Source: Pocillopora damicornis
Taxonomy: Eukaryota
NCBI RefSeq assembly: GCF_003704095.1
Contig: NW_020844463.1
Coordinates: 186,001-250,000 of the forward strand
DNA: 64,000 bases
Direction of reading: 5' to 3'
Position 1 is the first letter of the stretch, and each line of letters begins with the position of its first letter. The notes under the pieces are model-generated. The model did no database searches. It was given only the letters and a program-made list of their open reading frames with translations, and was not told the DNA's origin. Below are positions 1 through 47,965 of this stretch, piece after piece. Position numbers and translations under genes: made by a program.

Positions 1-220
1 GAAATAATATTTCCAAACTTTGTAGGTGACTACACAAGAGAATACAAAGGATGGAGGACGTACTTTGAACTGAGCATTTTTTATTTGAGGACGAGACGGT
101 TTAAGTCGGCAAACGGAAAAAAAAAAAAAGGAAAAGCATAACAAGCCAAAACAAATCTGTTCAAAGGAGGGAAAAACCTGACGCTTCATAGATAAGAATT
201 ATAAACACATCGTCACTTAA

Positions 221-1675
221 GTGCCGCTCTCGCTAAGAGCGGTCCTCTCGACTTCCCTTCGGAGAAAGCTTTTCTTTTATTTTTAATAACTGTTTTATTT
301 TTTCCAAATTAGGGCTGAAAAACCCAAAGCCACTCCAATATTTGCTTACCATGAATTAAGTAAACATTTTAAAAGCTAGAATTCTCGTTAAAATGAAAAA
401 TTCTTCAGTCCATTGTAATCACTTTCGATTCTAATTCGTTACATTAACTAATTTTGGTTCCAACGCGAAACAGGTAGTATGACAAAACGAAAAGTTTGCA
501 CAATCACGTCACGCAATCCATCAAGCCGGGTTTGTCCAATTGATTTTGATGGTCGCAGGGAAATGTCGAGTTTGTCGTTCAAAACCGTTGTGGTCCATAA
601 GAGCGTGACATCATTAATGACGGAAACAAATTTTTAGAAAGGAGGGCGAGTTCATCGGGTTGCGCGTACTAAATCTCGGGAGAAACTGCAGGAATTGTTT
701 TAGAGTGTATGCGTTTTGTTTTGTAAATATAAACTCTGACCTATTTTAACTTGTTTTTGTGTCCTTTTAAGCAACGCGATATGTCTGTTATGACCAGAGT
801 GCCAAAGTTTGTTCTTTAATTTTGATCTTCTCCACACTGTGCGTAATTCATGACCTGATATTTCAACGTAAATTATCGGAAAGGCGCCTTTTGATTACTT
901 TTGTTTACTTTGAAAGTCACGCAAACGCGCAAGCGTTACGACCGATAACGTTTACGCAACGTTTTAGGACAACTCGGCATCTATTCTCCATTCAGCTGCT
1001 ATGAAAACCTAAAATCCTCAACGTAGAAGATAAACGAACGAAGTTTGAACGGTCAAAAGGAGATCTTGGTCAATTTTCAGAATCATGCAAATAATCTTTG
1101 ACACGAATGCAATTGAGCAAACACATCGTTTTGCGTTGTTTGTAAGAAGTTGGTGGATGGAAGCTACAGATATACCCGCAGGTTTGAGGCAATCCGTGAC
1201 CTCATTGATGTATAAACTATGCACTGATATGTTTTTTTCAGCCCGATTATCGCCTGTGTTATGAGAATTCTTTCGTACAAAGTAGTGAATTTTTAAAATG
1301 CAAATTAAGGTCGCAGAGAAGGGTCTCCTCTGATCCCGCTGGTAAGAAAAATATTTCAGATGAAGTTTCCATATTTTGTCTGTGAACTAACTGAATACAT
1401 CTTGTAACTTGTAGCGAGATAGAATTCTGTGAGCTACATTGTTGCAGTCGCTGCGCGCTGGACAAAATCTTTGAAATTTACACTTTTGATCGTTGTCCAC
1501 AGGAGTGGTCTTGCCAAAAATCATTTTTGGCTTGTACGACGCAAGAAAAAGAGAATTGGAGAACAACTAAGCTATTTTTGAAACATGTGTCCTTAACCCT
1601 TTTCATGGGCAAAAAATAAAAAAAAAGTTTTCTCCGACGGGAAATCGAGAGGACCGCTCTTAGCGAGAGCGGCAC
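221..1675. mobile_element. Non-autonomous DNA transposon/MITE-like element with ~47-bp terminal inverted repeats, probably in intron 3 of gene A
   Basis: 221-267 GTGCCGCTCTCGCTAAGAGCGGTCCTCTCGACTTCCCTTCGGAGAAA is the reverse complement (2 mismatches) of 1629-1675. No credible ORF inside and no clear TSD. Confidence 0.75.
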
Positions 1676-1946
1676 AAATTTATAAAATGCAGTTCATTTC
1701 GAGAAATAAAATATCAAAAATAAAGTGAACTAAGAAAAAAGAGTAAATAACAGCGACATCACCAAGACACCGGAGCAAACAAACAAAATGAAGACACAAG
1801 GACTGGAGCATCTAACGAATTTGTGGCTAACCTCAAATATGAATATAAAATCAAAGTGTGACAATTATTAAAAATAGAAAAAATTAAAAAAGGCTATATT
1901 ACGAAACAAAGTCCAAAACGACCACATAGAAAGAATAACGGCTCAC

Positions 1947-3938
1947 CACTTTGAGTCCCTCATGAAGTCCATCGAATACCCTTGACTCTTGCAAACAAAC
2001 TTCAAATTCGCTCGGCGAAACCTTTTCAATCCAAACCAGCATTGCGTCGTATTTCCGGCCTTTCTTGGTGTGGTGCGGAGTGACGTGAACTGTAGGAGTT
2101 GTTTTGAAGACCTGAATTCAACAAAAAAAATTAAATGTCACTCGTCGCAAAATAGCATTATCTAAGAAAAAATGGTTTCTGGAGAATCTTCCAGGCCAAA
2201 AGATCGATGCAAAACTAAATTGACTAGAGTAAGGTAAATCAAGGGTCACTCTATTGAATCATTTATACATGAGGCACTTCGATTAGGAAAACTGCGCATA
2301 ATCAAAAAACTAAAAAAAAAATTAACAACAACAAAAAATGGCAAAGCAGACGGCTTTTTACACAAAGCCCATTTAGATTCCCAACAAACAATTTCAATTA
2401 GCTGCAGGCATCGAGATTTGAATAAAGGGGTCATATGAAACCCAGCACTTTTAACAACTTGGTCACTGAAAACTCAAACAATCTTACATTCTTAAATGCC
2501 ACCCGGTTGCACTGTGATCCTGTAGTGAATTTGCTGAACAACGTTGCACCATGTTCAGCTCCTGTCTGTGGACCTTGAAATGCAAACCAGTCGATGGTGA
2601 AGTTATCTCCTGCTCCTCGGCCCCCTTCAACAACACAGGCTTTGAAACGAACATTGCTCACTTCTTCTACCCATACAAATATAGAATCGTAGACACTGGA
2701 CGATCCATTTCCACGGTTCACTGATGCGAATACGCTCACTGGTGTTCCCTTCTTAAAACTTTTGCTAAATGAAGCTTGCTGGCAAAGATAATCGTCATTT
2801 GCTTGAGTGAAGTGAATTTTTCCTCTCTCGATGACTAAAATAAATTATAGAATTCAGCTTAGTTAACCCCATGATGCCGTGTATGATAAATGTAAGGGTA
2901 TTTGGAATGCATCTTCAAGGCATACAGTCGCAATGAATAATCTGAACGTAAGAACTCAAATTATACAAGCAAATTGCCAAAGGAGCATGAGAGACAAAGG
3001 GATATGAAGGAGCCGTGACAAGTAGAATTAGCCGTTTAACTTGCGATTTATCGGCTTATGCGGTGGCGCGAGTTTTAGGAACCAATCAACCAAAGCGATG
3101 AAGTAAGACAATAAAGTTCCTGTTTCCTTTCAACGTCATTAACTAACAAAAAAAATCATAATTTTTGGGGTTCCAATGCGGGCATAACGAGGTAGAGGTC
3201 ACTTTTGCAGATCAAAATCCAACTTTTTGGAGCTGTTTTTTCATTACTTCACTATTTCGGAAATGTTACTTCATTTTGGAGAGATAATAAAACGTGCGCT
3301 CGGAGAGGAATGAGTGCCTCGCTCAGAGAAATGAAGAGGAAAGCTAACGAAGAAGGAGGCGATGGTTTGCAAGATATATTCGAAATTCCTTAATATTTTA
3401 TAATCTGTTTTTGCAATGAACTATTCGTCTGCTTCAACCTAATTTCACAAAGTTATTCATTCCAGGAGAGATGGTTTATTATTTTTGCGAGTATCGGTTA
3501 TATATTTATTGTTCAAGATACTGGGAGTTGTGCAACCATTTAGAAAAAGATGAGTATTGATCCCAAATGTCATAAATATCAAATGAGTAAGTATTTGTAT
3601 CTGCATTACTTGTATTTGAAGCTACTGAGTGCCGTGTAAATTTGATAAAACTGAAATGTTGGGACTGTCGATTAGCCGGCAAACACCGTAAAAAAATTGA
3701 TCTAATCTTCAGAAATAAATGTTAATTTTAAAAGGAACGATTCAGCTTTATCTGCTTCGACACTAGCTTCGCAACTTCCGATCCTTAATACTACTGAAGT
3801 TTTACAAGGGGTAAAACTGGGCGGTGAAAGATGAAAATAAAATCAACAACATTAAAAAAACTTACCATTTCCTTCGACACTGATGAGTATAAAGAAAGTT
3901 ACCAGCACCAACAATAGTTGCCTCGCAGAAGGCACCAT
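1947..3938 (-). CDS. Gene A (5' part): secreted H-type-lectin-like repeat protein, paralogue of gene B; presumably continues beyond the left edge
   Basis: Exons 3866-3938 (MVPSARQLLLVLVTFFILISVEGN, signal peptide), 2488-2834 and 1947-2111. All have GT/AG sites and an open frame, and their lengths (73/347/165) equal gene B exons 1-3. Confidence 0.88.
2488..2834 (-). CDS. Gene A exon 2 (repeat 1 and start of repeat 2)
   Basis: VIERGKIHFTQANDDYLCQQASF...IDWFAFQGPQTG...QCNRVAFKN; closely similar to 14859-15205. Confidence 0.9.
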
Positions 3939-4829
3939 GGCTGCAATGTATAACGTCGCGTGAACGCCACTCCTTTGGAATGGAGACTTCTTCAAAAACA
4001 AATGAATTTACGATTTGGTAAAGTGATAGCATATCTCCAATAGCAAGTGCGCGCGCAAAATGGGAAGTCTTAGGATTATCTGTTTCAGCGCAATGTGGGT
4101 AGATTGCGCTTTAACGAGGTCACCAGAACAATTGAAAATAGGAATATCTACTTATTTTGATATCCAATATAAACATGAGAGGGATTCCAGCTGAGAAAAA
4201 AATTCATACGAAACACGCAAAAAGCTGTCAAGTCTTTCCAGAGGTCTTGAAAATCATCCAACTCCGATCAAGTATTCATTCATTTCATTAAAGGTACAAG
4301 GAGACATCCCGTTTCATTTTTTTACAAAAAGAAAAGGGGGAACAACTCATATCTATTGGCGTCAAACGGGATTTCTCTCTTATTCGGAGTAAAGATGTTT
4401 TCCATTTAGGGTGGTTTTGAGATGTAGTACTAAAACCGGATCATTTTGAGTGACTCAAATTCGTGCAATTCTCCGAAAGAAAATAATCCCATTCTGCACA
4501 AAAATTCAACATCGTCGCACTGCAGTCTACTAATAAAAGGCCATTTCCTTCCACAAAAACGACTTTACTACGATACTTTCCATATTTGTAAAAAGTCTCT
4601 GCGTCATACCTTACTCCCATTTTCATATCACAGTGTATTACGCAAGTGTCTTCAAGTGCGCCTAAAAAAAAGGTTTCTGAGTTTGACCCTGACGAGGAAT
4701 TTTGAATGGTGCGCTATGTCTGTACAAACCAAACAAGAAATGATCGAAATGGCTGTTCCTCTCTGATGTATGCAATTGTCGCTGTTGTAGGAAAGAAGGT
4801 AAAATCCCCAAACAGCACAGAGTAAAAAC

Positions 4830-6793: not shown

Positions 6794-7482
6794 CTAATTA
6801 TGGCAAACAGCACTTGCATCCTCATGATGACCGCAGTTGTGATACCAACGATACCTACGGCGATACCACCCCCAGTAGTAGTAATAGTAGTAGTAGCTCC
6901 TATTCTCATACGGACAGTCCAGCAATGATTCCTCTTTACCTTCGCAGGAAATATGGTATCGATGAATAGGACCCGAGCCTTGCCCGTAAGCCGCACCACG
7001 AGGTGCGGAGGTTGCACCCTTAAAGCCCAACTCACGGCAAACGACATTGGCATCATTCAAATTCCAGGTGTGGTCACACACGGTGCCCCATTTGCCTCCC
7101 TCGTAAATTTCAACACGGCCATAGTGGTGGGATCCTCCCGCTAACCGAACAACAGATGAACCATGGGTGCACTTCACACCAGCGTCCCGTTTATGCGTGC
7201 AGTCGTGCTTCCCCCATCCTCGATGTCTGCATTCATGGAGATAGGACTCACTTCCTGAACAAGACAAGTCGTCGAGCCATATTGGTCCGCTTCCTTCGCC
7301 ATGTTGAGCGCCCTTATAAACTTGTATGGCTCTTTTGTAACCAAGCTGTTTACATATTACGTTAGCATCATTCAAGTCCCAGGCATCGTCGCAGATGGTC
7401 CCCCATTTGCCATCGTAGAAAACTTCCACTCTGCCAGTTGACCGGCTGGTGCTGTTTATGCGCACGCTTCCATCGGTAATAG
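6794..7482 (-). CDS. Gene B terminal exon: two group-A (6-Cys) SRCR domains
   Basis: GRVEVFYDGKWGTICDDAWDLNDANVICKQLG...; GRVEIYEGGKWGTVCD...HEDASAVCHN*. Confidence 0.95.
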
Positions 7483-10400
7483 CTGACAATAAAGCAAGTG
7501 ATATTTTGTTCTCGGGTAACAAAGTAAATAAAATTCAAGCATGAGTGCGTCAAAATTAAAATAAAATAATCCTTCGTAACTGTGCGTTTTATCGGTTTCT
7601 GTGTCTAACTGTTCTGGCATGGAAAATGCGAATTATTGACAACGTTAATAAAATTCCGCTAAAGAAATCATCACATTTACTGACTCAGTCAGCTTTAAAA
7701 ACTCTCTACGGTGGCCGATTTAAATAATTAACTCGGTTTGTGAAACCAAATTATCTTGTTATACCCCACCAACGCAGCACCACAGTTTTCGTAAAAAAAC
7801 CTATTACCCTTACATAATATACTGTACGTGTGTTTCTTACTCAAAACCACCCTACCTCGATAACGTGCGCGAAATCCCCCAAATTCCTTAGAGCCATCAG
7901 AAGTAAATTTCACGAGAAGTTCGTTAGATGTGCTTGTCAAAGATTGCTTGGGGAGAGTATTTCCAAACAGAGTACCAATTACGGGAGCAGATCGTGACAG
8001 GCCATCATACACGGTAACGATGTCGACTTTATCCTCGGTATCCAAACGTATAAATACAAGTTCAATATGTCCATTGGTGGTTATGTTCCACGAGCAATCC
8101 ATTTTGCTTTTATAGGTTACTGAAACTCCAGGCTCATTTGACTCAATATATCCCATTGAATCGGACTGGACAACAGTCACATTTGCACAGGAGGGTATTA
8201 CCGTGGCGTTCGGTGCTGTGAAATTTAAAACAATAAGCTTCTCTCCCATAACTCCAGTCTAAACTGCATCAAAATTCACTTTTCTTTTTAATCTTGTTTG
8301 TCGTGATAATGCAAAAAAATAATTTTAAAGAATACCGTATACGAATTACAGTGAAAGAAAAACTGTGTAGCTGATACAACGTGTTAAACAATTTATCACT
8401 ACTGAACATTGAAAATGGCCCAACATGAAGTGTAAAATGTCACTTAAAGGAAGAAGGGAAATAAACCTTGGTGCGCTCTATACTTACCGCCACAAGTCTT
8501 TCCGGTTCCAGCCAACCCTGGAAAACATCTACATTTGTAGGTGCCAGGAATATTCTCGCAGACAGCTTGGGCATCGCACGTGAACGTTCCCAATCGACAC
8601 TCATTCATATCTGTTTCCAGATGAGAAAGATAATAGCAAATTAGCTACAATGACTGTACAGTCCAATAGCGAGAACTTGCTCTTGCCAGTATAAATGGTG
8701 CCTGGTATTTACTCAGTTTTGTGTGTTTCAACAGAAAATAAGGAATGGGGCATTTAATGTAACACCATCATTTGTCAGATCTCAGCGGTATCGAATTCTG
8801 TTTATGGGTTGAAACATACGATTAACGAGTGTTCACCAAAGAGAAGCGTTCTGAGTTTGTTTACAAGGCTCTTAAGTGGTTAATTGTTGATTGAATTGAG
8901 AAAAAAGGAAGAAAGAAACGAATGAAACTCAGTGATATCTAAATTAATAACGTTAGAATACCCTTTTAACGAGAATTAAACCAACCTTCGCAGTTCTTGT
9001 TTGCATCCAAACGGAATCCTTTATTGCACTTACAGGTGTAAGAGCCTTCATTGTTGATGCAATGGGAATCATGCGGGCAGTGATAATTGAAGTCTCTACA
9101 TTCATCATAATCTGCAGGGGAAGAAAAATTTTGATGACATTTTCGAAAGACAATTAAAAATATATAGCAGCCCAAACTAAAGCTAGCCAACTTAAGAGAA
9201 GATGCGTTAACCAACATCGTGCATGGAGATGATAGCTTCATGTGTAAATTATGCTTACTAAGCGATGAGCTAACTTTAACCAACAGAAAGAACGAGAAAT
9301 AGACATTTACAAAGTATTGTAGAACATCCTGGAAGTTTAGAAACCAACTATTCTGGTAGAATTTCATCAAAATTACGTAATTTGATGAAGATTCTAGAAA
9401 GTTCCATGCTGTGTCATCAGAAGTTCAATTATGCGTGTCAACATGACTAAGCATTCTACAAATTTCCAGAAACTGCTCTTTACATTCCCTATCCATAACA
9501 CTAAGCCGACTGTGACATGTGTACCTTCAGAAAATTTTAGGTGTGCTCATACTTCCAGAGGGTTTAAAAGGCCTGATATCCCATAGCAATAGAAATGATT
9601 GTTATCTTCACCAACCTTTCTTGCAGGTAAATCTGTGACAATCAGTACAGTTCACGTCATTCCACTCGTAATGATGGTTTTTGAGGAAGCCAAGAGTATG
9701 AACACAATCTTCATTGCCATAGTTGTTTGGTTGGCCCTTCGCCCAGTTCTTAAATTTAAATGTGCTCCCATCGCTCCACACGAACTTCCCTTCTGAGTTG
9801 ATATCGGTGAGCCCTAGCCAAGAGTGCTCTCCGCCATGCAGACTCTGGACATAAACGTTTTCTTCCTGGCTGTGTATACTTGGAAGGTTAGCTCCCTGCG
9901 TGGCGCATTTTCCCTGGCTGCTGCCCCACGAATCACATGCAGCCACTTGTCTATAGCAATACCCTCTGAAATAATTCCAGTCGTCGTCGCAAATGCTTTC
10001 TATAAATTAAACGATAACACACTTTCGTTTATTGTATCCAGAGTTTCAGCATCTATTATACTTGTTCCTTTATCTAAGCAATCATTTCGAACGTAAATTT
10101 GCATAAAATAATTTGTGAGGTAAACAATAAGTAATCTGTGAAACGGGAATGAAATTTTAAGTTATAGTCCATAGATAGGGCATAAACTTTTATAAATGTA
10201 TCCCTTCTCATTTCAGAATAATTTATTTTTGTTGCTGTTGTTCTATCATCGATGCATGCCATCTCTTCACCTCTCCGTCTATCCTGGCTTATTTTTCTGA
10301 ACATGCAGGAAACACAACTTTATATCTAAGGTCATCAGAGGCACAAAGACACTCAGCGAACATTGGACTCTAAAATCATATTTTACTTACCTCCCATCAC

Positions 10401-13400
10401 TGCGTATGACACATTTAGTGGGTCAAAGCGTTGTACATACAGTTCTTTGACACAGATTCGAAATCCAGAAGTAGTGATAGACTAGGAAGGGAAAAAGTTA
10501 TTAAAGATACACTAAATAAAAATTCTCATACTCAAACCCCAAATAGGAGTAACGGAAATAAACAGAGAACAACCAAACAAAAATTGAAAAAGAACATAGA
10601 TGCAACAAAGAAAAAGAACAAAGAAGCTTTATAAGGGTATTGGATACTTCACAACACCAAGTTAGCATCCGTGAAGCATAAAATTTCATCGGTACGTAAG
10701 TTTCCTGTAATAGTCCATAGCTTTTGAGGACCGTTAGGTTTTAAACATCATCCTTATGCGCCTAAACCAATAAGCACGAAAAAAATTGATTCTTTACGAA
10801 TATCGCAGCTGTCTATTAATTAAATGAAAGATGACTAATGATTAAGACAAAATTTAGAAATAAAGTTACAAATATGAGATATAAACTATTACAAGAGTGT
10901 AGAAGCAGCGTCAACGAGGAGAAAAACAAAAACAAAGAAGGATTCCATTTTCACTTGCTTACCTCGATCCAGCTCACGATTCCATTACACTCTGCTGCAG
11001 CATTGCCTCCACTGGTAGAATGTCTGGCAGTTACCAATATTGTTGGTGGGTAGGTGTAAGCCGACTGAAGGTAACTCACATCCTTTTGATAGAAGTAATA
11101 ATTGATTAATCGATTAGCCTCTTTTACTGCCTTCAGGATAGGCGATCCCAAGTGCAGATTGTCTCAGCTAGGCATATTCTTGGTTAAGAAAGCTCCCCAG
11201 CGAGGTTTGAGATAAATACACGATTAAAATTAATTGAAAATTGATTCTGTATCAATAAAAGGCTTCCAGAACGAAATATAACTTTATTTGAATTAGGGTA
11301 TACATCACTCACCTTACAGAAAGCGTAGTTGTAATTTATTGATGGCAAACCAACATTCGGAAACATGACTTCGCTGCTCTCTTTAACCATCGGTCTAGGT
11401 GTTTTGCCAATTGCAAGCCAGTTCTGATCCAAAAGATAAAGAGACGAAGAATCAGTTATCGTTTTTACTTGGTATCTATCAAATTTTCTCTCTGATACCA
11501 AATTCACATTCATTAGGCATTCATTTTATTCATTTTTATTGATACTATGTAAAGTCGTGTATTTTATGAGTCAATGTTGTAAATTTAAGATTCTTAGAGA
11601 TGAAAATAGAGCCGGTAATCAGCGTACCGGATTTCTGTGGAGGTTGAGAAATTTCATGAAACGACAGCGAATAAACGACACATCCAAAAATAAAGATGGC
11701 ATCGAACTAGACCAAGATTGGCACGAATCGAGTGCTCTCGGTTTTCCATATGTTTTAGCCAACTTTAAATTTGAATTTGACAATTCCTACCACTGATATA
11801 TCATCATGAACTCCAGCGAAGTTTTGAAGCTCCCTGAGACAAATCTGAAAAGAACTCGTGGAGACATCCTCAAGCCACACGGTGCTAGCATCGTGCCTCA
11901 GGCTTGATCTGTAATGGACAGCTGTGGTGAAGACTTGTGGTGGCTCAGAATACTTCCCCTAAGGAAAAAAAAGAAAATCCTACGGCTTAGGTCAGGTTGA
12001 TTTAAAGGAGAAGAAACGAACCAAAAAAGTTATTGATTTAGCTCCAGTCTTAGCGGTTTTTAGCGTAAAGATATCTAAAGGTTTTGGGGACGGGGCAATA
12101 TAAAAACAAGAAAAAGAAACATTTTAGCTATCTGGTAATAGCCACCGCGATGACCCTTAAACTGATTAAAGAAGAGGAAAGGAAGGAAAAAGAAGTGTTG
12201 TGAAATGAAAAGGGTTAACCCACGAACTATTAGCTTGATTTCAAATGTGAATACAGCAGAGAACGTACTTTTGGAAAAGAAACGGTCCGGCAAGTGGTTC
12301 CAGTCCACCAAGTTAAGAACATCTCCTCGCCTGCTACTCCTCCAGGTGGGGCTCCCTGATAGGCCATCCAGTCAATTAAAGCAAAGCTGTCCGCAGGGTA
12401 GTCATTCCTTCCAGCTCGCGTAACGCAGGCTGTGAACTGAGTAGTGTTGATGCTCTCGACCCAAGGTGTGGTGGCCTCGTGTACCAAAGTATCATCAGAA
12501 TAGTTGAAGTGATTGACAGTCAGTTGTACGTAAATTTTCATATGAGGATAGAAAATGAAGGGTTTAAAATCAATCACTTCACACTGATCCTCTGCCCACG
12601 AGGGTGTGTTCTGGAACTCGTGTCTGCCTTTCTGCATCGGAAAACCTACAATCATGATGAAAACCATCTTTGATTAAGTCCAGGTAAAAGTGGCGTCTTT
12701 ATTTGAAAGTTAATTTGTGGGAAGGGGAAAACTCGAGGGTCTCAAACAGGTAACCAACCGAAGTATCCAGTATGTTCTCCATGATTGCTTGGAAAGATAT
12801 TTTTTTGCCAATTAGTGGTTAGAACAAGGTTACTACATAACTTTAGCAATTTAAGCAGAGATAAGGGCAAGATGATGGCTAAAAAGTAAGTCAGTTGAAC
12901 TCTGCAAACCACTCATTGCGTAGTTTGCTTACCTCTGCAGCTTCCTGGATGGTAGTTGGTGTAGTTTCCACGTGTTTTACAAATCTCTTTTTTGAGGAAA
13001 CACATGTTTTTGAACGTGCGACCGTTGGAAGCACAGACTTGTTCCTCGTATGATGGGCAGTTATCCTTACAGATACAATCAAATCTCCAGGGGGTATAAG
13101 CAAAGCAAAAGCTTTCGTAGGTACAGTTAACATTTCTGCACGGATCAAGGTCTGAAAACGAAAGAAATATTATAAATGATTGCTAAATTGCATTTAATAA
13201 TAAGGAGTGGACGTCAAAGAAAACATGAAATAATTTTCACACTTACCCCCAATAACCAAATAGTCTATGGACACATCACTCCTTTGACTATCGTATCCTG
13301 CCCAGTCTTTCATACAAATTTGAAAATGTTTCGCGGTCACTTCCTACAACATGATAGTACAAGAGTTCCAGAAACCAAAAGACAACGAAAGGAAAACAGC

Positions 13401-16003
13401 AAAAACAAATGCAACAAAAAGGGAGGAAAGCACACAAAAGGAAAAGGAAATAAAGAAAAGATTTGACAAAAAAGAAAATGAGCAAGGGAAGAATGGGAAG
13501 AAAAGAAACTCACACAAAATCGAGAGAAGAAAATTACCTTAAATACACCAGGAAAGCAGAAAAATAAGGAGAATGATGTGATTAAGAAGTGGGCGACATG
13601 AGCCAAGAAACAGAAGTCACTAACTCCAATCGAACATTTGCATTACGCATCTTTTCAACCATTATGGTAGGCGAATTTATGAGTGATGTGCAAAGGATAT
13701 TACATTTCAAGTTAAAGTCACCTCCATCCAGGTGATTAAAGGTTCCTTATACTTTGGGCTACAGCCATCGTGCGACTTATTTCCTTTGGCAGCATCGAAA
13801 ACAGTAGTGAGAACCACAGGCGGCGTAAAAAATGGCTCGTCAAATTTGATAGTCTGTCAATAAATAAAAGAATATATAGAATTAGAGTAACTGATTTAAG
13901 TTTGAATCCTGTGAAAAAAGGCAGAGTGTTGTGTTAAGCTAATTTAGATCAAATTAACAGAAAAAAGATTATGGCCTCCGTCATTCCTGACTCTCGCAAT
14001 AAGGCAGGAGTTTCTTAGACAAGAACCTACTGCGCCTATGTCACTACAATATTAACTAATAATTTTGAAGAAAGTAGACTTACCCTACAGAGAGCATACT
14101 TTTTTTGTGCTGCAGGTAACTCCTTTGATGAAAACATGATGCTTTTCGACTCTTTACACCTCCAGGAAGAAGGATAATTCTCGAAAGCCATCCAGTCCTT
14201 GAACAAGAAAAAAGGAACAATTTTCATTAAGTTTTGGCGAGCTAAACACTAAATTTTGGGCACATCCATATTAAATTGATTTGAGTACGAGCACCAAAAC
14301 ATCAACACAATTAAATGAGCGACAGACTGAAAAGATGATAATCATAATATTAATGCTTGAGAAAATATATGAAATTATACTGATTATAACGATGATAACA
14401 ATAAATAATTTGAAATAGAGAAAACAACGGAGGAGGAACTGCATATGGATGAGCAAGGAGACACAAACCAATTTATACCTATTTGTATGCACAAATTTTG
14501 TACATCTCCGGAAAAAAATGAAAAAACAACACAGAAAAAGATAACGGTTGTACAAGTAATCACTTACCACCCTGAGTTTTTCATGAGATCCATCAAATAC
14601 CCTGGATTCACGAAGGCAGACCTCAAATTCACTTGGAGAAATATTCTCGATCCAAACTAGCATGGCGTCATGCTTCTGGTCCTTGATTCTGTGCTCAACA
14701 GTGACGTGAACTTTCGGAATTGTTTTAAAGCCCTGAATAGGGAATTAAGTGTTGGAGAAACGTTACATATTATTTGTTTCTTACTTCATATGTCTAAGTC
14801 AACTCTCTACACCAATTACCCCTAATGTCTTCGAAAGATTAGGTAAAAAATATCTTACCTTTGGAAAAGTCACCCGGTTGCATTGCGATCCTGTAGTAAA
14901 TCTACTAAACATTGTTTCACCTTGTTGAACTCCTGTCTGTGGACCTTGAAATGCAAACCAGTCGATAGTGAAATTATCTCCATTTCCTCGACCTCCTTCA
15001 ACAACACAGGCCTTGAAACGATCGAATCTTATATCCTCCACCCATACAAAAATGGAATCGTATACACTGGACGATCCATTTCCACGGTTGACTGAAGCAA
15101 ATACCCGTACGGGTATACCCTTGGTGAAACTTTTGGTAAATGTGGCATATTGGCAAAGGTAATCGTCGTCGGCTTGACTAAAGTGAATCTTTCCTCTCTG
15201 CACTCCTAAGTAGAAATTATGGTCTTAGGTTATCTAAAATAGTACTACATATCTGCGAATTAAGAATGCCTTTAGAATTTTTAGAAATGCCATACACTTC
15301 ATCACGCTTAGGGGGCCGAGCTTGCTAATTATTGTTCAGAGGGTGGCTTGTTTTTTTTTACCAAAAATAGCAAATATTCTAGATGTGTAAAAAAGGTCTA
15401 CTGAGAATATTTCAGGATATTTTCTTGGAGTTTTTAGTATCCGCTACGCTGTCATTAGATTATGATTTCATCGCTGTAAAAGGGGTTAGAGGCACTTGCA
15501 CCTATTCACTGTAAATATTCAACAAAATTGAATTTTTTATACGTTTTTGATGTTGTCTTCCTTGGCAAGTCTCAGAAATTTTGAACGATCGTTCACCTAT
15601 TTTTCCTTCAATATTGTTTCCCAGACCCCTCAACCATTTCTTTCTATGCCAACCTAATTACAGAAGTTTCTTCGTTGTAGGCTAAATAATCAAAATATTG
15701 CGATTGCATTTTTCAAGCTCATCTAGATGCGAAACTTTATTTGGTGGTGTACGGTATTCCCTTTAACAAGATTTTATGTATCACGTTGCGCTTGGGTGTG
15801 TCATTATAAAAGAATTCACGAAGCTCTGAATTTCGATTAATGCTTTACTAAATAACGCTAATGAAAGGTATATAATAGCCTGACTTGAAAAAAGTGAGAG
15901 GTAAAACTTGAAAGATTCAGAGAAACCAACCTTTTCCTTGGACGACACCAAAGATGAAGAAACAAACCAACAACAATGCTCCCTGCCTTGCAGACAGCAT
16001 CAT
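6794..16003 (-). CDS. Gene B: secreted multidomain lectin/scavenger-receptor protein (SP, 3 H-lectin-like, FOLN/Kazal, 3 H-lectin-like, CTL, 2 cbEGF, CUB, 2 SRCR), ~1231 aa, DMBT1-like C-terminus
   Basis: 17 exons with GT..AG sites and a continuous frame: 15931-16003, 14859-15205, 14568-14732, 14084-14197, 13722-13853, 13247-13343, 12933-13151, 12269-12645, 11791-11958, 11313-11423, 10963-11082, 10391-10481, 9616-9999, 8986-9111, 8488-8610, 7856-8215, 6794-7482. Sum 3696 nt = 1232 codons including the stop. No TM segment seen. Confidence 0.9.
7856..8215 (-). CDS. Gene B exon 16: CUB domain
   Basis: GYIES...Y...MDCSWNI...LVFIRLDTE...VTVYDG...LLVKFTSDGS...GGFRARY; phase-1 introns on both sides. 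Confidence 0.92.
8488..9111 (-). CDS. Gene B exons 14-15: two calcium-binding EGF domains (8986-9111, 8488-8610)
   Basis: DYDEC...CINNEGSYTCKC and DMNECRLGTFTCDAQAVCENIPGTYKCRCFPGLAGTGKTC. Confidence 0.9.
9616..9999 (-). CDS. Gene B exon 13: C-type lectin domain
   Basis: CDDDWNYFRGYCY...WLGLTD...WSDGS...NWAKGQPNN...EDC...WNDVNC...FTCK. Confidence 0.93.
10391..12645 (-). CDS. Gene B exons 8-12: second triplet of H-lectin-like repeats
   Basis: Five exons (377/168/111/120/91 nt) repeating the motif C..V.F...(F/Y)..PP.V.....W(V/L/I)E.I....F..C......(D/N)W.A. Confidence 0.85.
12933..13151 (-). CDS. Gene B exon 7: follistatin-N/Kazal domain
   Basis: DPCRNVNCTYESFC...CICKDNCPSYEEQVCASNGRTFKNMCFLKKEIC...HPGSC (a different frame from the listed ORF). 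Confidence 0.9.
13247..15205 (-). CDS. Gene B exons 2-6: first triplet of H-lectin-like repeats
   Basis: Five exons (347/165/114/132/97 nt) with the same motif and intron phases as exons 8-12. Confidence 0.85.
15931..16003 (-). CDS. Gene B exon 1: signal peptide
   Basis: MMLSARQGALLLVCFFIFGVVQGK; 73 nt, phase-1 donor GTTGGT. Confidence 0.85.
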
Positions 16004-16029
16004 CTCTTCACTGTGTCATCGACGTGTAC

Positions 16030-16215
16030 GCCCCTGTTGGAGTGGAGACGTCTCCAAGAGGCAAATGAATTTACGGTAGATGTAACACGACTGCGTAATC
16101 ATCATTTACGTAAAGTATCTGAATCGCGTGTTTCAGCACATTATTGCATAAGATTCCTTTGACGAGGTCACTTGAACAATAGCAATTGCGACATGGTAAA
16201 ATCTACTTATTCCCA
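16030..16215 (-). promoter_or_regulatory. Conserved proximal upstream block shared by genes A and B
   Basis: Collinear motifs TGGAGAC, AATGAATTTACG, TGTTTCAGC, ACGAGGTCAC, GAACAAT and ATCTACTTATT also occur at ~3975-4160. Confidence 0.55.
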
Positions 16216-18930: not shown

Positions 18931-21900
18931 AGATGCGAAACCAAATGAAATACTTATATATATGTAAATTAGCTTTTCTGGTTCCAAAAATATATGTAAA
19001 AACTATAAAATTTCAGTCACAACTGAAGTCAAGAAAACATGCACACTATTCTGAAAGAGGTCTGGCAACAACTCCCTCTTGATTGTCAAATTCGTCTGGC
19101 TGCACATATCAACTCGTTGTTGCCTGCACTAGACCTGTTTGGGGACTTACTACCAATTACTTTCATTTTAAGATCAACTACACTGTATTAGCTACACAAT
19201 AAATATATGTTTCTAACATTTACATATTTCTTATAAATATTTCTATATTTTCATATATTCTTAGTGCATTATAGCATGGCAGGGGATCTGTTTCTTTCCG
19301 CAGTCACATCGCTGTTCTTATTTGAATTAATGTAGTACCTTTTTTGTGTTAAGAGCCTGTCCACGAGAGCGCCAGACAGTCGTGCTACATGCCATCTCAC
19401 CGATTTCAATAAAACAATTATTGCTCTAGGCGGTCGCTTAACCAAATAAACCTACATTTTTTTGCTCTTTATACAAGATGACTAATGAAGAAAGGTAAAA
19501 AATATGAAAAACTTTCGATATTTTTTGTAAGAATGGAAAATTTCACGTTTAGAGAGATGCATGTAGGCGAAAAATCGATGGGAAAATCGTAGCGTTTCTT
19601 TTTTCTGTCGTTTATTAATTTGGAGATTTGCTAAAATCAAAAAATATGGCTTTGGTACGACACAAAACATTTATCAGTCTATAATTTGATTGTTTATCGT
19701 CATCATTGCTCATTTTAGGAGATTTTAAAGTCACACGCTGCATGTTAGTTGACATTATTACATGTTCCACTACGCTACAACTTCGGCTTTTACAGACGAG
19801 AAATTCAGCGCTCTCGCTTGAGAGCAAATATCAATAGTTCTATCAAACTAAAACTGTGCTTCTATCCCGAAAATAAAATTAAAACAGAGTTGTCGTTGTC
19901 ACTTACCGCCATAAAACATTTCCATCCAGAACTCCGCTAAGCTAACATCTGTTGCGTGACCCAAAGACTCCGTGGGAATTATTTAAGCGCGTTGTTCACG
20001 CTGTCTGCTAGATAACAATTTCAGAATAATCTGCAGATCTCTATGATTATTTGCTTGCTTCGATCGTAAAATATCTTCATTTTTTCTCAAGCATTCTATT
20101 ACTACATATAAATCTACATCTCTCTAGATCAAGTGTTACCGGCGATTAATTGCATGACTTATGAAATTTATTTATTATTATGAGTCAGCAGTAGCAGTAC
20201 CTGTACCCTCTTCTGCAGTCTTCGTCTAAATTTTGCAAGGTGCCTCCTTATCTTCTGCCTTGTTCAGTCAGTTTCGACCTCTGAAGCTAGATCATCGACA
20301 TCGCCCTCTTTGTCCTCATTCATATTGACCCCGTCAATAAACAAATTTTTGTTACGGCAGATAACCGGCTGAAGTATCGAGCGATTTGCTGCTCTATCAA
20401 CCGGTCAGTCTTAGACAACATTCCTGGCCGATGCGTCTCTTAAACTCGATATTTGGGAAGTCACATTAGAGGCGGTTGCCTTATTTGTTTCCTCCCCTGT
20501 CCAGCACACGTCTAAGAGATAATTCTTTGCTTTCTCATATACGAATAGTAAATACAGGCGTGACATTTTTCGAACGTTACATGTACGAGTACGTGATCCG
20601 TTTGAGGATCACAGATTTAGTGTAAATATTTGACCCCTCAGCATCACGTAATTTCTCTAGTTTACAGAGGTCTTAAAACGCTTCTTTGCATGGATTTGCA
20701 TTCTGCGGGTAGAAGGCTAAAAGCGAATTTCTAGGGCGTAATTGCCTTTGATTTCTCAATTGAAGTTGTCGCAAACACAGTTTTTGGGGGTCACGAAACA
20801 ACAAAAACTTATCAGGACCAAGTTTCATGTTCTAATGAGAATAAATAGCAAATAAAAACATGTTCTCTTGAGAAATACAGTTATAGATAACAGATGCTCT
20901 TTAAAACAAATAGTGATAGAAAAGGTTTCTGTTCTGCTCAATTTTGACTTTTCATAGCTTACTTCCAAATCTGAGGGAACGCGTTGAGGGAATAAAAAAA
21001 ACATACACGTGTGATAATTCACGGAAGAGTACATTTCAAGGTTGCTGAATGTCTCTTTTGAATAAGCAGCACGCCAGTGAAAGCTAGTTTCGAGGCATTG
21101 ACTGAACGACAAGTCAGAGACGCCAATAAGAAACAAAAATATTGCTTGTTGAAGGAAAATAGTGGAACCGGAACTGGAACCGGAAACAAATTTTAAAAGT
21201 TCCGATTAAACATCTGCACAGGCTTAGTTAGCAGAGGTAGCTTAGGTACCAAACCTTCTACGTTTTAAGGAGCTATGTTAAGGAGATCTGCGCTGTACCT
21301 TAACACTAATCCTCTCTCCTTTATTTCGGGCGTCCCGTGCGTTATTGCCAAGAAAATTGCCATGCAATTTCAAACATAGAATTAAGCAACAATGTTCTGT
21401 AGACTCATTCAATTGTATTCATAGTAACGCGTACAGAAACTATTTGATTGTTATCAAAGTTATACAAATTAGGTATGATTGAATACACGAACTGAAAAAA
21501 TTGAAACGACCAGTAACCCTGCACTAACCTAGACGACAAGGTGAAGCCTACAGTCAACATTAGTTTTATTCCTGCCCAACGACTTATTTCAAAGACTCTT
21601 CCTTGCCACTTGCGGGCTCTGCCTAGAAACGTTAAGCGGCAATTTGTCAATGTGAGCACGCTACAACAAAGTGGTGCATTGCAGTACTACGAAATGAATT
21701 ACTTATCACTTTTTTGTTTGCAACAAATCTATGAGTAACAAACCACACTAGCATCCTCACTACATGTACATTCATGTTTTCCCCAGCCAAGGAACGAACA
21801 ACAAGGCAACATTGGCTCTCCCCCTTGGCAGTAAACACCATCCATCCTGACTGGGTCAGAACCCTGAACGTCTTCAGTGCAACAACTAGCCCGAGATGCA

Positions 21901-23019
21901 CCAGAAAAGCCACGCTAACGACACACCACACTGGCTTCGTTAATTGTCCAGTGATCATCACACACTGTGCCCCACTCCCCGTTGTGATAAACTTCTGCGC
22001 GTCCTTAGTTTGCTCTACCGCCCATTAAACGGATAGTGACTGTATAATGAACGTAAATAAAATGATTCCTGAGTGAGAGATATAATTAATTGGCCATAGG
22101 ATACCTCTGAGACAAGAAACTTTGAGACCTTCATATTTAATTCTGCTTGCAAAAAAAAATAAGAATTGGGACCTTTTGCTGTTCCTGTTTGCTATAAAGG
22201 ACTTCAGTAATTTACCTGTGCAGGACTGGTGACCATTACTGAAATATCCGGGCGAATATCTACATTCATATGAACCAATTCTATTGACACACTGAGCGTT
22301 CGAATTGTAGGAGATAGATCCCGTCTGACACTTATCCACATCTGTTAAAGCAGTATGGGAACCCGTCAGAGTTAAAGCTATATTTTCAAAATCGATTAAA
22401 TTTTGAAAATATTAAGTAATATGACCGTGTGGAATACAATTCGGTTTGTAATCATACGGGCAATTGACAAAACCGGACGACCGCGAAGCACACACTGACA
22501 ACGAAATGAGCCTTCAGTATTCTGACAATTGGCATTCGGATCACAGGCGGGAATGGAAGAACTACATTCGTCAACATCTGCAAAGAAATCAAATTGTCAG
22601 TAGTGGAGTTTCGATTGATCATTTTTACTGCTTGTAACTGTACAAGGAAATATAAGGAGAAGTGACAGGAGACCTATTCAATCTCGCTGGTGTTATTTTT
22701 TATCACTTGGGCGCACTTTGTTATATCGAAACACTCTTCGTGAAGGATGGTCAAATCAAAACTAGACAACTAAGATAAGTTTTCAATGCCAACGTAAAAT
22801 ACATGCCTGAATTACTTCGCCTTTACCTAATAACCGACAGCATACTAAAAACAATACATGCTTTCTTAAAACTGCAAGTTTTCTAATAATAACTTCCTGA
22901 CATTCGGCAAGTTCGTAAGAAAATTATCAACTGTCTTTCACTTTTATACCTCAAAATTGTCTCACTTTAATTCGAATTGATATAACCACAATCCACATAC
23001 AGTACTATGCAAAAGTAAT

Positions 23020-37402: not shown

Positions 37403-38938
37403 CGCCCAAGGTTTCCCATTGGCATTTGGATCACAGACGTGGACGGAAGAACTGCATTCGTCAACGTCTGCAAATAAATCAAATAGTCAGTGGTGGAACT
37501 CCGATTGATAATTTTTGCTGCCTGTAACTCTAAAAGGAAACATACCAAAATCTTTAACACCAAATACTCTTTACAGAAGAGGTTAAAAGGGAGAAGTGAC
37601 AAGAGACCTGTCCAATATCTGTGGTGTCATTTTTCAACACTTGGGCGCACTTGGTTATATCGAAACAATTTCGTGGAAGGATGTTCAAATTTGTTGGAAC
37701 AGCACAATTCAAAACTACACACTTCAGTGCATAAAGGCCTTGGCGACAATACGGGAAAAGTACTTAAGGACAAATAATGCAAATGCTATTTTTCAAGCAA
37801 TTGTTTATGTAAATGTTTTTCACTCAATCACGTTTTACATTCAAAAGTGAAATTATTTTAGTAAGCGAATACAACCTAAATATAAATTTCTAAATGGTTG
37901 ACAGTGTAAAACACCGATGAATATAGGAATACATGCCATTTTCCGCACGATAATCGAACGGTAAATACAAGAAAATGCGTGGGAATAACCGCATTCAGGT
38001 GGTGAACCGCCGCTAACAACGCGTTTTCTCAACGCAAACAGCTGCAAACGCTAGAAAACATTGTATTTCAATTTGTTAACCAACCCGTGAACGTTGGACG
38101 ACACTTGGTTTTCAAGCGTTATCTACGCATTTACTGTCCTAGAAAATGGAAGAAACGCATTGTCTTCAACGGAAAACGTCTGTGAAAACAATGTTTTGTT
38201 ACTGAGAAAACACCAGTAAACAACGGAATACAAACTGTTTTCCCGTCTGTTAACCGTACTCTTAACACTAAGAAAACAATCGTTTTCATAGAGTTCACTG
38301 TGGAGGAAAACTGCTGGATAATGGAACGAATACTCCAATTTGCCGACTCGAAAACAACGGGAGAAAGTTGGATTTTCTTTTCGGAAAATGTCAGAAAATG
38401 GGTGAATAATGCTGCGTTTTCAAATATTCACAACTTGTTTTCCGAACGGGTGAACACCACTTTTTTTGCAGTGTCAGGTATAATGGAGTAAACCCAGAAT
38501 CTGGCACTGACGGCTTACCCTCCTTCACTTGTCTTAATCTCTTTACACGTTTCAGCCGGAGGTTCACTTATATCACTTATCATTCCATAATATAATTATT
38601 CTTAATTCTTCATTTTCTCTTTTCTTCTTTTAGCATTAAGATATTACCTCTCTTCGAGTCTTTTTTAGTACAAAATCCTCTTCTCTGGCCTCCTTAGAAC
38701 GGTTGCCCAACTCGCAAATGTCTTCGGTGACGACGTAGTTGCAACTTTGGCATATGATATCTTGGTAACATTCCCGTAAACACACATCACCGAGATCCGC
38801 TTTTGGGATCTTTTTGAAGATGTGTCCTTGCAGCATCATACCCAGGATCGACACCTCTCCTTTGGCGTTGCTGTGTTGAGAATTTGCATCTAAGAATGTT
38901 GGACTTACAACCATTAGCAGTAGCAGAGTGAGGGCCAT
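37403..38938 (-). pseudogene. Gene D: deleted duplicate of gene E (SP-PAN exon, partial exon 2, internally deleted cbEGF)
   Basis: 38648-38938 closely matches 52402-52714 but has a 3' deletion. ~38490-38570 ELPAETCKEIKTSEGG* has a stop and no acceptor. 37403-37467 DVDECSSSVHVCDPNAN is truncated. Confidence 0.8.
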
Positions 38939-47639: not shown

Positions 47640-47965
47640 CTAGTTATTGCACGCCACACTGGCATCCTCACTATGTACACAGTTATGTTTTTCCCAGCCA
47701 GGGAACGCACATCGAGATAACATTGCCTCTCCCCCTTGGCAGTAGACATCATCCATCCAGACTGGGTCAGAACCCTGACCGTATTTAGCGCAACAACTAG
47801 CCTGAGATGCACTAGAGAAGCCGAGCTGACGACAAACCACATTGGCTTCGTTAATTGTCCAGTGATCATCACACACTGTGCCCCACTTCCCGTTGTGATA
47901 AACCTCTACACGGCCGTAGTTTGCTCCACCGCCCATTAAACGGATAGGAGCGTCCTCATTAGTGG
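47640..47965 (-). CDS. Gene E terminal SRCR exon
   Basis: IRLMGGGANYGRVEVYHNGKWGTVCDDHW...ASCCAKYGQGSDPVWMDDVYC...SEDASVACNN*. Confidence 0.9.

What the first reader, a model, noticed from the sequence alone, without database searches (positions are those of the whole stretch)
10391..15205. Six H-type-lectin-like repeats arranged as two triplets: possible single-chain pseudo-trimeric lectin modules
Seen: six ~90-110-aa repeats share C..V.F...F..(P)P.V.(V/T)...W(V/I/L/M)E.(V/I)....F..C.....(D/N)W.A and come as 3 + Kazal + 3. Known: H-type lectins (Helix pomatia agglutinin, discoidin C-domain, octocoral SLL-2) share a similar V.F..F..P.V / F / W.A pattern and work as trimers with sugar sites between protomers. 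Inference: each triplet folds as an intramolecular pseudo-trimer with three non-identical sites, making a multivalent glycan reader. The family assignment comes from my pattern recognition only.
Basis: partly seen in the sequence, partly recalled or inferred. Interest (0 to 1): 0.85.

Follow-up and report, generated by a model that had tools for sequence, protein, structure and literature searches.

The report
Coral LePin-like lectin: two pseudo-trimers
This is an expressed coral gene of the known LePin family (secreted lectins that tag symbiotic algae for uptake), and its six H-type lectin domains are predicted to fold as two single-chain three-in-one sugar-binding modules, an arrangement I could not find described for this lectin class.

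Summary
Window 10391-15205 is exactly exon 2 to exon 12 of a minus-strand coral gene (ATG 16003, stop about 6797). All 11 introns are confirmed by RNA contigs from four studies.

These exons encode six repeats of about 90-105 aa, arranged 3 + Kazal + 3. A five-exon cassette was duplicated.

The H-type lectin assignment holds:
- Full-length homologs pass Pfam H_lectin (up to 68 bits against a cut-off of 24).
- The model of the window's own repeat 4 matches HPA, HaA and SLL-2 at Z 7.8-8.3.

The pseudo-trimer idea is supported in silico, on natural homologs only:
- 24 of 31 longer homologs have 3 or 6 repeats, including prokaryotic ones.
- A three-repeat homolog folds as one rigid body (pTM 0.89).
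- Repeats 4, 5 and 6 of a Pocillopora homolog dock together (score 0.83, best control 0.19), using the same alignment columns in each repeat.

LePin has the same H_lectin, Kazal, C-lectin and EGF set and is a secreted alga-binding lectin of Xenia. Here it carries extra CUB and 2 SRCR domains and belongs to a family of at least 12 copies.

Sugar binding and the sugar sites are untested. The window's own spliced protein was not folded.

The parts
15931..16003 (-). Exon 1: start codon and signal peptide (hydrophobic core LLLVCFFIFGVV), ending in phase 1
   Evidence: Read from the sequence. It is the only block conserved with the upstream region of the neighbouring paralog (70% over 160 nt). The RNA joint 15931 to 15205 is seen in runs X1 and X10.
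14859..15205 (-). Exon 2: whole of H-lectin repeat 1 (type A) plus the first strand region of repeat 2
   Evidence: Open frame. Paralogous to exon 8 (E 2.7e-18). Joints confirmed.
14568..14732 (-). Exon 3: core of repeat 2 (type B, the most canonical H_lectin type)
   Evidence: Pfam H_lectin E 0.025 on this piece. 43% identical to exon 9. Joints confirmed.
14084..14197 (-). Exon 4: last strand of repeat 2 and first part of repeat 3
   Evidence: Paralogous to exon 10 (E 2.4e-6). Joints confirmed.
13722..13853 (-). Exon 5: middle of repeat 3 (type C)
   Evidence: Pfam H_lectin E 0.12. Joints confirmed.
13247..13343 (-). Exon 6: end of repeat 3, ending in phase 1
   Evidence: Paralogous to exon 12 (E 1.3e-4). 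Joints confirmed.
12933..13151 (-). Exon 7: Kazal domain between the two triplets
   Evidence: Pfam Kazal_2 E 5.7e-8, 33.2 bits against a cut-off of 22.8. Joints confirmed.
12269..12645 (-). Exon 8: whole of repeat 4 (type A) plus the first strand region of repeat 5
   Evidence: AF2 model m316c126fc558 has six strands and pLDDT 76. Z 8.3 to HPA and 7.8 to SLL-2. Joints confirmed.
11791..11958 (-). Exon 9: core of repeat 5 (type B)
   Evidence: Pfam H_lectin E 0.0069. Joints confirmed.
11313..11423 (-). Exon 10: last strand of repeat 5 and first part of repeat 6
   Evidence: Sequence. Joints confirmed.
10963..11082 (-). Exon 11: middle of repeat 6 (type C). The acceptor is at 11082, not at the later AG.
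   Evidence: The RNA joint 11082 to 11313 is seen in runs X5 and X10. Homology to P0001.
10391..10481 (-). Exon 12: end of repeat 6, ending in phase 1
   Evidence: Sequence. The RNA joint 10481 to 10963 is seen in all four runs.
9611..10006 (-). C-type lectin domain exon (open frame)
   Evidence: Pfam Lectin_C E 1.8e-20, 74 bits.
8447..9424 (-). Two calcium-binding EGF exons, inside the open frames 8969-9424 and 8447-8644
   Evidence: Pfam EGF_CA E 9.1e-10 and 4.9e-10.
7731..8258 (-). CUB domain exon (open frame)
   Evidence: Pfam CUB E 4.9e-16.
6797..7534 (-). Two SRCR domains followed by the stop codon. No membrane-spanning segment follows.
   Evidence: Pfam SRCR E 4.8e-61, two stretches. 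Translation.

Best explanation
The stretch is the N-terminal two thirds of an expressed, secreted mosaic lectin of a stony coral. The gene belongs to the LePin family (lectin plus Kazal protease inhibitor domains).

The domain order is: signal peptide, three H-type lectin domains (types A, B, C), Kazal, three more H-type lectin domains (A, B, C; a duplicate of the same five-exon cassette), C-type lectin, two calcium-binding EGF, CUB, two SRCR.

Each A-B-C triplet most likely folds into one compact body. In it, the three six-stranded beta-sandwiches sit around a pseudo-threefold axis, as the three separate chains do in snail and octocoral H-type lectins. Inter-domain grooves would then be fixed within one chain and free to diverge from one another.

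The protein would work as a soluble multivalent pattern reader. Two pseudo-trimeric H-lectin heads and a C-type lectin would bind glycans on algae or microbes. The Kazal, EGF, CUB and SRCR parts would engage proteases or host receptors, as proposed for Xenia LePin, which coats Symbiodiniaceae cells before phagocytosis.

Shown here: the exons, the splicing, the transcription, the six repeats, the domain identities, and the H-lectin fold of repeat 4.

Predicted on natural homologs only: the pseudo-trimer packing.

Inferred: sugar binding, and a role in alga or microbe recognition.
For: - Gene model and expression: all introns are confirmed by RNA contigs of four studies.
- Repeats and the cassette duplication.
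- Domains: Kazal; Lectin_C, EGF_CA, CUB and SRCR.
- H_lectin above Pfam's cut-off in homologs of the same architecture, from Oculina, Porites and Pocillopora.
- Fold: the window's repeat 4 model matches HPA, HaA and SLL-2 and the trimeric phage or pyocin fibre tips at Z 7.8-8.8; the next fold scores Z 5.0.
- Repeat number: 15 homologs have three repeats and 9 have six, out of 31 homologs of 250 aa or more. The rest are visibly truncated models.
- Prokaryotic examples: three-repeat proteins also occur on a bacterial-type contig and an archaeal-type contig.
- Rigid body: the three-repeat protein P0091 gives pLDDT 89.3 and pTM 0.89.
- Whole-model matches are single-chain pseudo-trimers: EBV dUTPase (Z 5.9, 184 aa) and the PCSK9 C-terminal domain (Z 5.4, 199 aa).
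- Docking: the ESMFold2 test of R4, R5 and R6 of Pocillopora P0001 (46-77% identical to the window, exon by exon) scored 0.83 against a best control of 0.19. The mark was reached by 51 of 78 solved complexes and 2 of 108 mismatched pairs. The runs share at least 76% of contacts and partner pLDDT is at least 74.
- Geometry: repeat 6 touches both repeat 4 and repeat 5, and the contacts use the same alignment columns in each repeat.
- Conservation: predicted interface positions are more conserved among 14 coral homologs (0.71 against 0.60, Mann-Whitney p 2e-5).
- LePin: the literature describes a secreted protein with the same domain set that binds algae, and RNAi lowers uptake (PMC7332420; bioRxiv 10.1101/2022.12.13.520278; 10.64898/2026.04.08.717340).
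Against: - The packing evidence is prediction only. It comes from homologs, not from the window's own spliced protein.
- Both predictors may reproduce the known H-lectin homotrimer from memory, a caveat the tool itself states.
- Triplet 1 was not tested directly.
- No sequence-level match to any solved H-type lectin could be obtained. The HPA sugar-binding residues therefore could not be mapped.
- The type C repeats (R3, R6) lack the H-D-A motif kept by types A and B, so fewer than three sites per module may be active.
- The A/B/C position types are not conserved outside cnidarians.
- The conservation test is confounded by buried strand residues.
- Which of the 12 or more paralogs, if any, is the functional LePin ortholog is unknown.
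Confidence: 0.7

Rival explanations
1. Beads on a string that trimerise between chains. Each H-lectin domain is independent. Three copies of the whole protein align in parallel, so that R1 pairs with R1 of the other chains, R2 with R2, and so on, as ordinary H-type lectins do.
For: All solved H-type lectins and the related phage or pyocin fibre tips are homotrimers of separate chains (entries listed). The predictors could simply be copying that geometry (caveat).
Against: This does not explain why repeat number is 3 or 6 in 24 of 31 homologs from corals to prokaryotes. Linkers within a triplet are only a few residues long. A single chain of three repeats gives pTM 0.89. Different repeats dock on each other at 0.83 against 0.19. 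The repeat types A, B and C have diverged to about 25-35% identity while keeping the same interface columns.
Confidence: 0.15
2. H-lectin fold without lectin activity. The triplets are rigid scaffolds or protein-binding modules that present the Kazal, C-type lectin and SRCR parts, and they no longer bind sugar.
For: No match to solved H-lectins at sequence level, so the known GalNAc-binding residues cannot be shown to be kept. Pfam detects only one or two of the six repeats even in full-length homologs. The same fold is used in bacterial minor pilins for protein contacts (TcpB and CofB).
Against: Xenia LePin binds algal cells (bioRxiv 10.1101/2022.12.13.520278). The octocoral H-type lectin SLL-2 is a known symbiosis lectin. 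Several invariant polar residues of coral homologs (R199, N236, H247, G270 in P0001 numbering) lie at a predicted inter-domain groove, which is where H-lectins bind sugar.
Confidence: 0.12

Closest known systems
LePin of the soft coral Xenia sp., and LePin-like proteins of symbiotic anthozoans (Hu et al., Nature 2020, PMC7332420; bioRxiv 10.1101/2022.12.13.520278)
   Same: N-terminal signal peptide, H-type lectin domains, a Kazal domain, a C-type lectin and EGF domains, and no membrane anchor. Named homologs with the same 3 + Kazal + 3 + C-lectin + EGF layout come from Oculina, Porites and Pocillopora.
   Different: The window's gene adds a CUB and two SRCR domains at the C-terminus. It is one of at least 12 paralogs in this genome, four of them in tandem on its own contig. 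Orthology to Xenia LePin was not testable because no Xenia sequence was at hand. The LePin text searched for those words (the bioRxiv preprint) does not mention triplets, trimers or structure models; the two other LePin texts were read only at their LePin or H-type lectin passages.
Classical H-type lectins: Helix pomatia agglutinin (2ccv), Helix aspersa agglutinin (4q56), octocoral SLL-2 (3wmp), discoidin I and II C-domains (2w94, 2vm9)
   Same: The six-stranded beta-sandwich fold (Z 7.8-8.3 for the window's repeat 4; Z 8.1-9.4 for P0091) and the Pfam family PF09458 in homologs. The threefold arrangement is predicted.
   Different: Those are single-domain protomers that assemble from three separate identical chains. 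Here three diverged domains are fused head to tail in one chain, twice. No sequence-level match was obtained, and the sugar-site residues were not mapped.
Single-chain pseudo-trimers derived from trimeric ancestors: PCSK9 C-terminal domain, herpesvirus monomeric dUTPase (EBV 2we1) and its relatives pp71 and ORF10
   Same: They work on the same principle: three beta-sandwich modules in one chain around a pseudo-threefold axis. They are the only PDB chains that align over the whole three-repeat model (Z 5.4-5.9, 184-204 aa).
   Different: The module folds and functions are unrelated and the scores are low. This is an analogy of architecture, not homology.
C-terminal tips of phage tailspikes and R-type pyocin fibres (4ru4, 4ru5, 6cl5, 7eea)
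   Same: The same H-lectin-like fold at equal Z (7.0-9.9). They are trimeric and bind surface glycans.
   Different: They are homotrimers of separate chains at the end of a fibre, and they are not tandem repeats.

Membership tests
H-type lectin (Pfam PF09458, H_lectin) | Sequence match to the family profile above the curated cut-off (24 bits) | tested here: inconclusive
   The window's exon pieces score only 13-17 bits (E 0.007-0.12), because every domain but R1 and R4 is split by introns, and R1/R4 are a divergent type. The joined protein was not searched. Full-length homologs of the same architecture pass: 68, 57, 53, 45, 45, 42, 38, 35 bits.
H-type lectin (Pfam PF09458, H_lectin) | Six-stranded antiparallel beta-sandwich superposable on HPA, SLL-2 or discoidin | tested here: met
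   The model of window repeat 4 has six strands. It gives Z 8.3 with 82 aa and rmsd 2.7 to 2ccv, and Z 7.8 to 3wmp. The top 12 matches are all this fold, and the next scores Z 5.0.
H-type lectin (Pfam PF09458, H_lectin) | Threefold assembly of domains with sugar sites between neighbours | tested here: inconclusive
   Predicted as an intrachain pseudo-trimer on homologs: pTM 0.89, docking 0.83 against control 0.19, and the same columns at the interface. This is a prediction only, the window's own chain was not folded, and the sugar sites were not located.
H-type lectin (Pfam PF09458, H_lectin) | Conserved GalNAc-binding residues and measured GalNAc binding | not testable with these tools
   No alignment to a solved H-lectin sequence could be obtained. 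Binding needs an experiment.
LePin-like secreted lectins of anthozoans | Signal peptide and no transmembrane segment | tested here: met
   Exon 1 encodes a hydrophobic signal peptide. The last exon ends after the second SRCR with no hydrophobic tail. No predictor program was run.
LePin-like secreted lectins of anthozoans | Joint presence of H_lectin, Kazal, C-type lectin and EGF domains (the filter used by Hu et al.) | tested here: met
   Kazal; Lectin_C and two EGF_CA; H_lectin by fold and by homologs. There are extra CUB and SRCR domains.
LePin-like secreted lectins of anthozoans | BLASTP match covering at least 60% of Xenia LePin at E 1e-10 or better (the criterion in bioRxiv 10.1101/2022.12.13.520278) | not tested
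   No Xenia LePin sequence was available through the tools.
LePin-like secreted lectins of anthozoans | Expression in alga-hosting gastrodermal cells and binding to Symbiodiniaceae | not testable with these tools
   Only bulk transcription and correct splicing are shown. The cell type and the binding are unknown.

The most novel reading that the evidence does not exclude
The single-chain pseudo-trimer of H-type lectin domains is an unrecognised lectin architecture that occurs across kingdoms (cnidarians, bacteria, archaea, protists). In LePin-like proteins it would be the unit that reads algal or microbial surface glycans. Because the three domains are fused, their inter-domain sites are free to diverge (types A, B, C). 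The expansion to 12 or more paralogs in this coral would then diversify recognition of symbionts and microbes. The two triplets may further stack into a one-chain copy of the HPA/SLL-2 hexamer, with Kazal as the hinge.
Probability: 0.35. Interest if true: 0.75.

Novelty: new variant of a known kind. Interest (0 to 1): 0.55.

Why it matters
LePin is one of the few coral proteins with functional evidence for the first step of coral-alga symbiosis: recognising the right alga. How it reads the algal surface is unknown, and standard annotation sees only one or two of its six H-lectin domains.

If each triplet is a fixed pseudo-trimer, three things follow:
- The binding units are defined. They can be expressed as compact pieces of about 33 kDa and put on glycan arrays.
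- Specificity differences between paralogs and between coral species become testable.
- H-type lectins gain a second assembly mode, fused rather than associated, which also occurs in prokaryotes.

If the prediction fails, this remains an ordinary new member of a known coral lectin family.

Tried and rejected
- Sequence links to solved H-lectins failed. Profile or single-sequence searches of PDB sequences found no HPA, SLL-2 or discoidin. I tried the R1/R4-type profile A1, the triplet profile A3, P0091 and the R2/R5 core profile A5. Mapping of the sugar-site residues was therefore abandoned. A mapping from my memory of the HPA sequence suggested that the conserved H-D-A motif lies near HPA Arg63, but that is a lead only and is not used as evidence.
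- Foldseek alone gave only weak E-values for repeat 4 (0.02-0.2). The fold call rests on the VIA-align second look.
- I tested whether the A/B/C position types are ancient. They are not: non-cnidarian triplets mostly resemble type B at all three positions. The triplets outside cnidarians therefore may have arisen or homogenised independently.
- The ESM Atlas look-up of the coral triplet returned only unnamed cnidarian fragment clusters.
- P0004 against PDB sequences returned only Kazal (agrin, follistatin) and C-type lectin matches.
- The joined (spliced) protein of the window was not built, searched or folded. All searches were exon by exon by reference, and natural homologs served as stand-ins.
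- The N runs in the window were left untouched.

Full report
WHAT IS THERE

The window is animal DNA with about 37% G+C. Stop-free segments on the minus strand between 6.8 and 16 kb carry recognisable domain pieces.

Reading the splice sites gives the following gene:
- Exon 1 is 16003-15931. It holds the start codon and a hydrophobic signal peptide, and ends in phase 1.
- Eleven exons follow, from 15205 to 10391.
- Then come exons for a C-type lectin, two calcium-binding EGF domains, a CUB domain and two SRCR domains, with the stop near 6797 (Pfam; translation).

The finding's coordinates are exactly the first base of exon 2 and the last base of exon 12.

RNA contigs from four runs of four different studies show every one of the eleven introns in 10300-16100, at the predicted bases. 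All have CT..AC on the + strand, which is GT..AG on the gene strand. One run matches the window almost letter for letter. The gene is therefore transcribed and spliced as modelled. Lower-depth contigs that retain introns are also present.

THE REPEATS

The eleven exons encode six repeats of about 90-105 residues, with a Kazal domain (Pfam Kazal_2, E 5.7e-8) after the third.

The two halves are exon-by-exon duplicates of a five-exon cassette (all E-values):
- exon 2 with exon 8: E 2.7e-18
- exon 3 with exon 9: E 1.6e-13
- exon 4 with exon 10: E 2.4e-6
- exon 6 with exon 12: E 1.3e-4

Weaker similarities run across repeat types (down to 8.5e-5). So there are three repeat types in the fixed order A-B-C, A-B-C.

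FAMILY

On the window's exon pieces, Pfam H_lectin is only sub-threshold (E 0.007-0.12). This is expected when a 67-position model is split by introns.

An exhaustive HMMER search with exon 8 found 332 relatives. The named full-length ones are hypothetical proteins of Oculina patagonica, Porites evermanni and Pocillopora damicornis. They have the same layout, and they pass Pfam's H_lectin cut-off (up to 68 bits against 24) together with Kazal, Lectin_C and EGF.

The most divergent repeat type (A) has no Pfam hit at all. I therefore modelled the window's own repeat 4 with an alignment of exon-level homologs (A1). The model has six strands and pLDDT 76. It aligns to Helix pomatia agglutinin (Z 8.3, 82 residues, rmsd 2.7), Helix aspersa agglutinin (Z 8.3), octocoral SLL-2 (Z 7.8), and the trimeric tips of phage tailspikes and pyocin fibres (Z 7.0-8.8). 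After these the scores fall to 5.0. The H-type lectin assignment is therefore sound.

THE PSEUDO-TRIMER

Four lines of evidence agree.

(a) Counting. With a repeat profile trained on the homologs, 15 of the 31 homologs of 250 aa or more have three repeats and 9 have six. The remaining 7 are visibly truncated gene models. Three-repeat proteins also sit on a contig with bacterial gene content and on one with archaeal gene content. Some metagenome proteins have six contiguous repeats and no Kazal.

(b) Rigid body. A protein consisting of three repeats and nothing else (P0091, 278 aa) folds with pLDDT 89.3 and pTM 0.89. That pTM is not attainable for three independently placed domains.

(c) Whole-model matches. 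The only PDB chains that align across that whole model are known single-chain pseudo-trimers. These are the monomeric EBV dUTPase and its relatives, and the PCSK9 C-terminal domain (Z 5.4-5.9, 184-204 residues). The scores are low but consistent.

(d) Docking. The three repeats of triplet 2 of the Pocillopora homolog P0001 were given as separate chains to the docking test. P0001 is 46-77% identical to the window, exon by exon.
- The score was 0.83 and the best of 3 controls scored 0.19.
- The mark was reached by 51 of 78 solved complexes and 2 of 108 mismatched pairs.
- The runs agree in at least 76% of contacts, and partner pLDDT is at least 74.
- Repeat 6 touches both other repeats. The closest contacts pair the same alignment columns of different repeats: the strand before the conserved His, the W-x-E strand and the last strand. 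That is what a threefold axis produces.
- The predicted interface positions are more conserved among 14 coral homologs than the rest (0.71 against 0.60, p 2e-5). Buried strand residues confound this test.

Caveats on the pseudo-trimer:
- All of this is prediction.
- It was done on natural homologs, because the window's spliced protein has no reference and was therefore neither searched nor folded.
- Triplet 1 was not tested directly.
- The predictors know the H-lectin homotrimer and may be copying it.

WHAT IT IS CALLED

A literature search showed that the domain set H-type lectin, Kazal, C-type lectin, EGF defines LePin. LePin is a marker of the alga-hosting cell type of the soft coral Xenia (PMC7332420). 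It was later shown to be secreted, to coat Symbiodiniaceae cells, and to be needed for new alga-containing cells (bioRxiv 10.1101/2022.12.13.520278). LePin-like genes are reported across symbiotic anthozoans, with some variant architectures (10.64898/2026.04.08.717340).

The window's gene is thus a LePin-like gene with an extra CUB-SRCR-SRCR tail. Its genome holds at least 12 good copies of the type A exon. Four of these lie in tandem on the window's own contig, including the next gene, whose first exons lie at window 1947-2844.

The LePin preprint, the one text searched for those words, does not mention triplets, trimers or structure prediction. The other two LePin texts were read only at their LePin or H-type lectin passages. 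Searches for tandem or pseudo-trimeric H-type lectins found nothing relevant. This covers the held library only.

HOW IT PROBABLY WORKS

The protein is likely a soluble reader with two rigid three-domain H-lectin heads and a C-type lectin for surface glycans. Its Kazal, EGF, CUB and SRCR parts would make contacts with proteases or host receptors.

Fusing the three protomers fixes the stoichiometry and lets each inter-domain groove evolve separately. Types A and B keep an H-D-A motif next to the W-x-E strand, and type C has lost it. The number of active sites per head may therefore be fewer than three.

Sugar binding itself, and the mapping of HPA's GalNAc residues, could not be tested.

VERDICT

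The gene is a new member of a known family. The new element is the structural reading: fused pseudo-trimeric H-lectin modules, which also occur in prokaryotes. It can be tested directly with recombinant triplets.

Noticed in passing
window 1-4012, minus strand: A second LePin-like paralog starts here. Its conserved 5' exon is at about 3858-4012, repeat 1 at 2494-2844 and the repeat 2 core at 1947-2114, and it runs off the window start. Its type A exon of triplet 2, just outside the window, is 95% identical to ours. Four such genes lie in tandem on this contig, and the genome holds at least 12.
   Followed up: partly
window 6840-6905, minus strand: The last SRCR domain carries a run of Tyr, Trp and Arg residues (seven Tyr in a row, then W/R/Y). 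It is inserted before the final conserved Cys region and is seen in the open frame 6797-7534.
   Followed up: no
window 21650-22411, 38639-39022 and 47643-52720, minus strand: Further secreted mosaic genes lie upstream. Two PAN/Apple-like first exons have near-identical signal peptides (38.6 kb and 52.4 kb). There are several calcium-binding EGF exons (48.8-51.9 kb, 22.2-22.6 kb) and SRCR exons (47.6 kb; also 21.7 kb, which is in a different frame and possibly broken).
   Followed up: no
window 10454-10992, 11395-11820 and 13316-13750: RNA-library contigs at 10-50 fold lower depth run straight through introns. They may be unspliced precursor or DNA carry-over. One run also shows an acceptor shifted by one base at 10964.
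   Followed up: no
L001:3313-4533 and L002:8001-12938: Prokaryotic proteins have exactly three H-lectin repeats. One is a 406-aa protein with a lipoprotein-like N-terminus and a Gly/Ser-rich linker, on a bacterial-type contig. The other is a 1645-aa protein that also hits C1q, on a contig with proteasome and KH/beta-CASP genes (archaeal-type).
   Followed up: partly
whole genome G000: The assembly size (234,350,878 bases in 4393 contigs) matches what I recall for the published Pocillopora damicornis assembly. This is from memory only and was not tested. The Pocillopora protein P0001 would then be a paralog from the same species.
   Followed up: no
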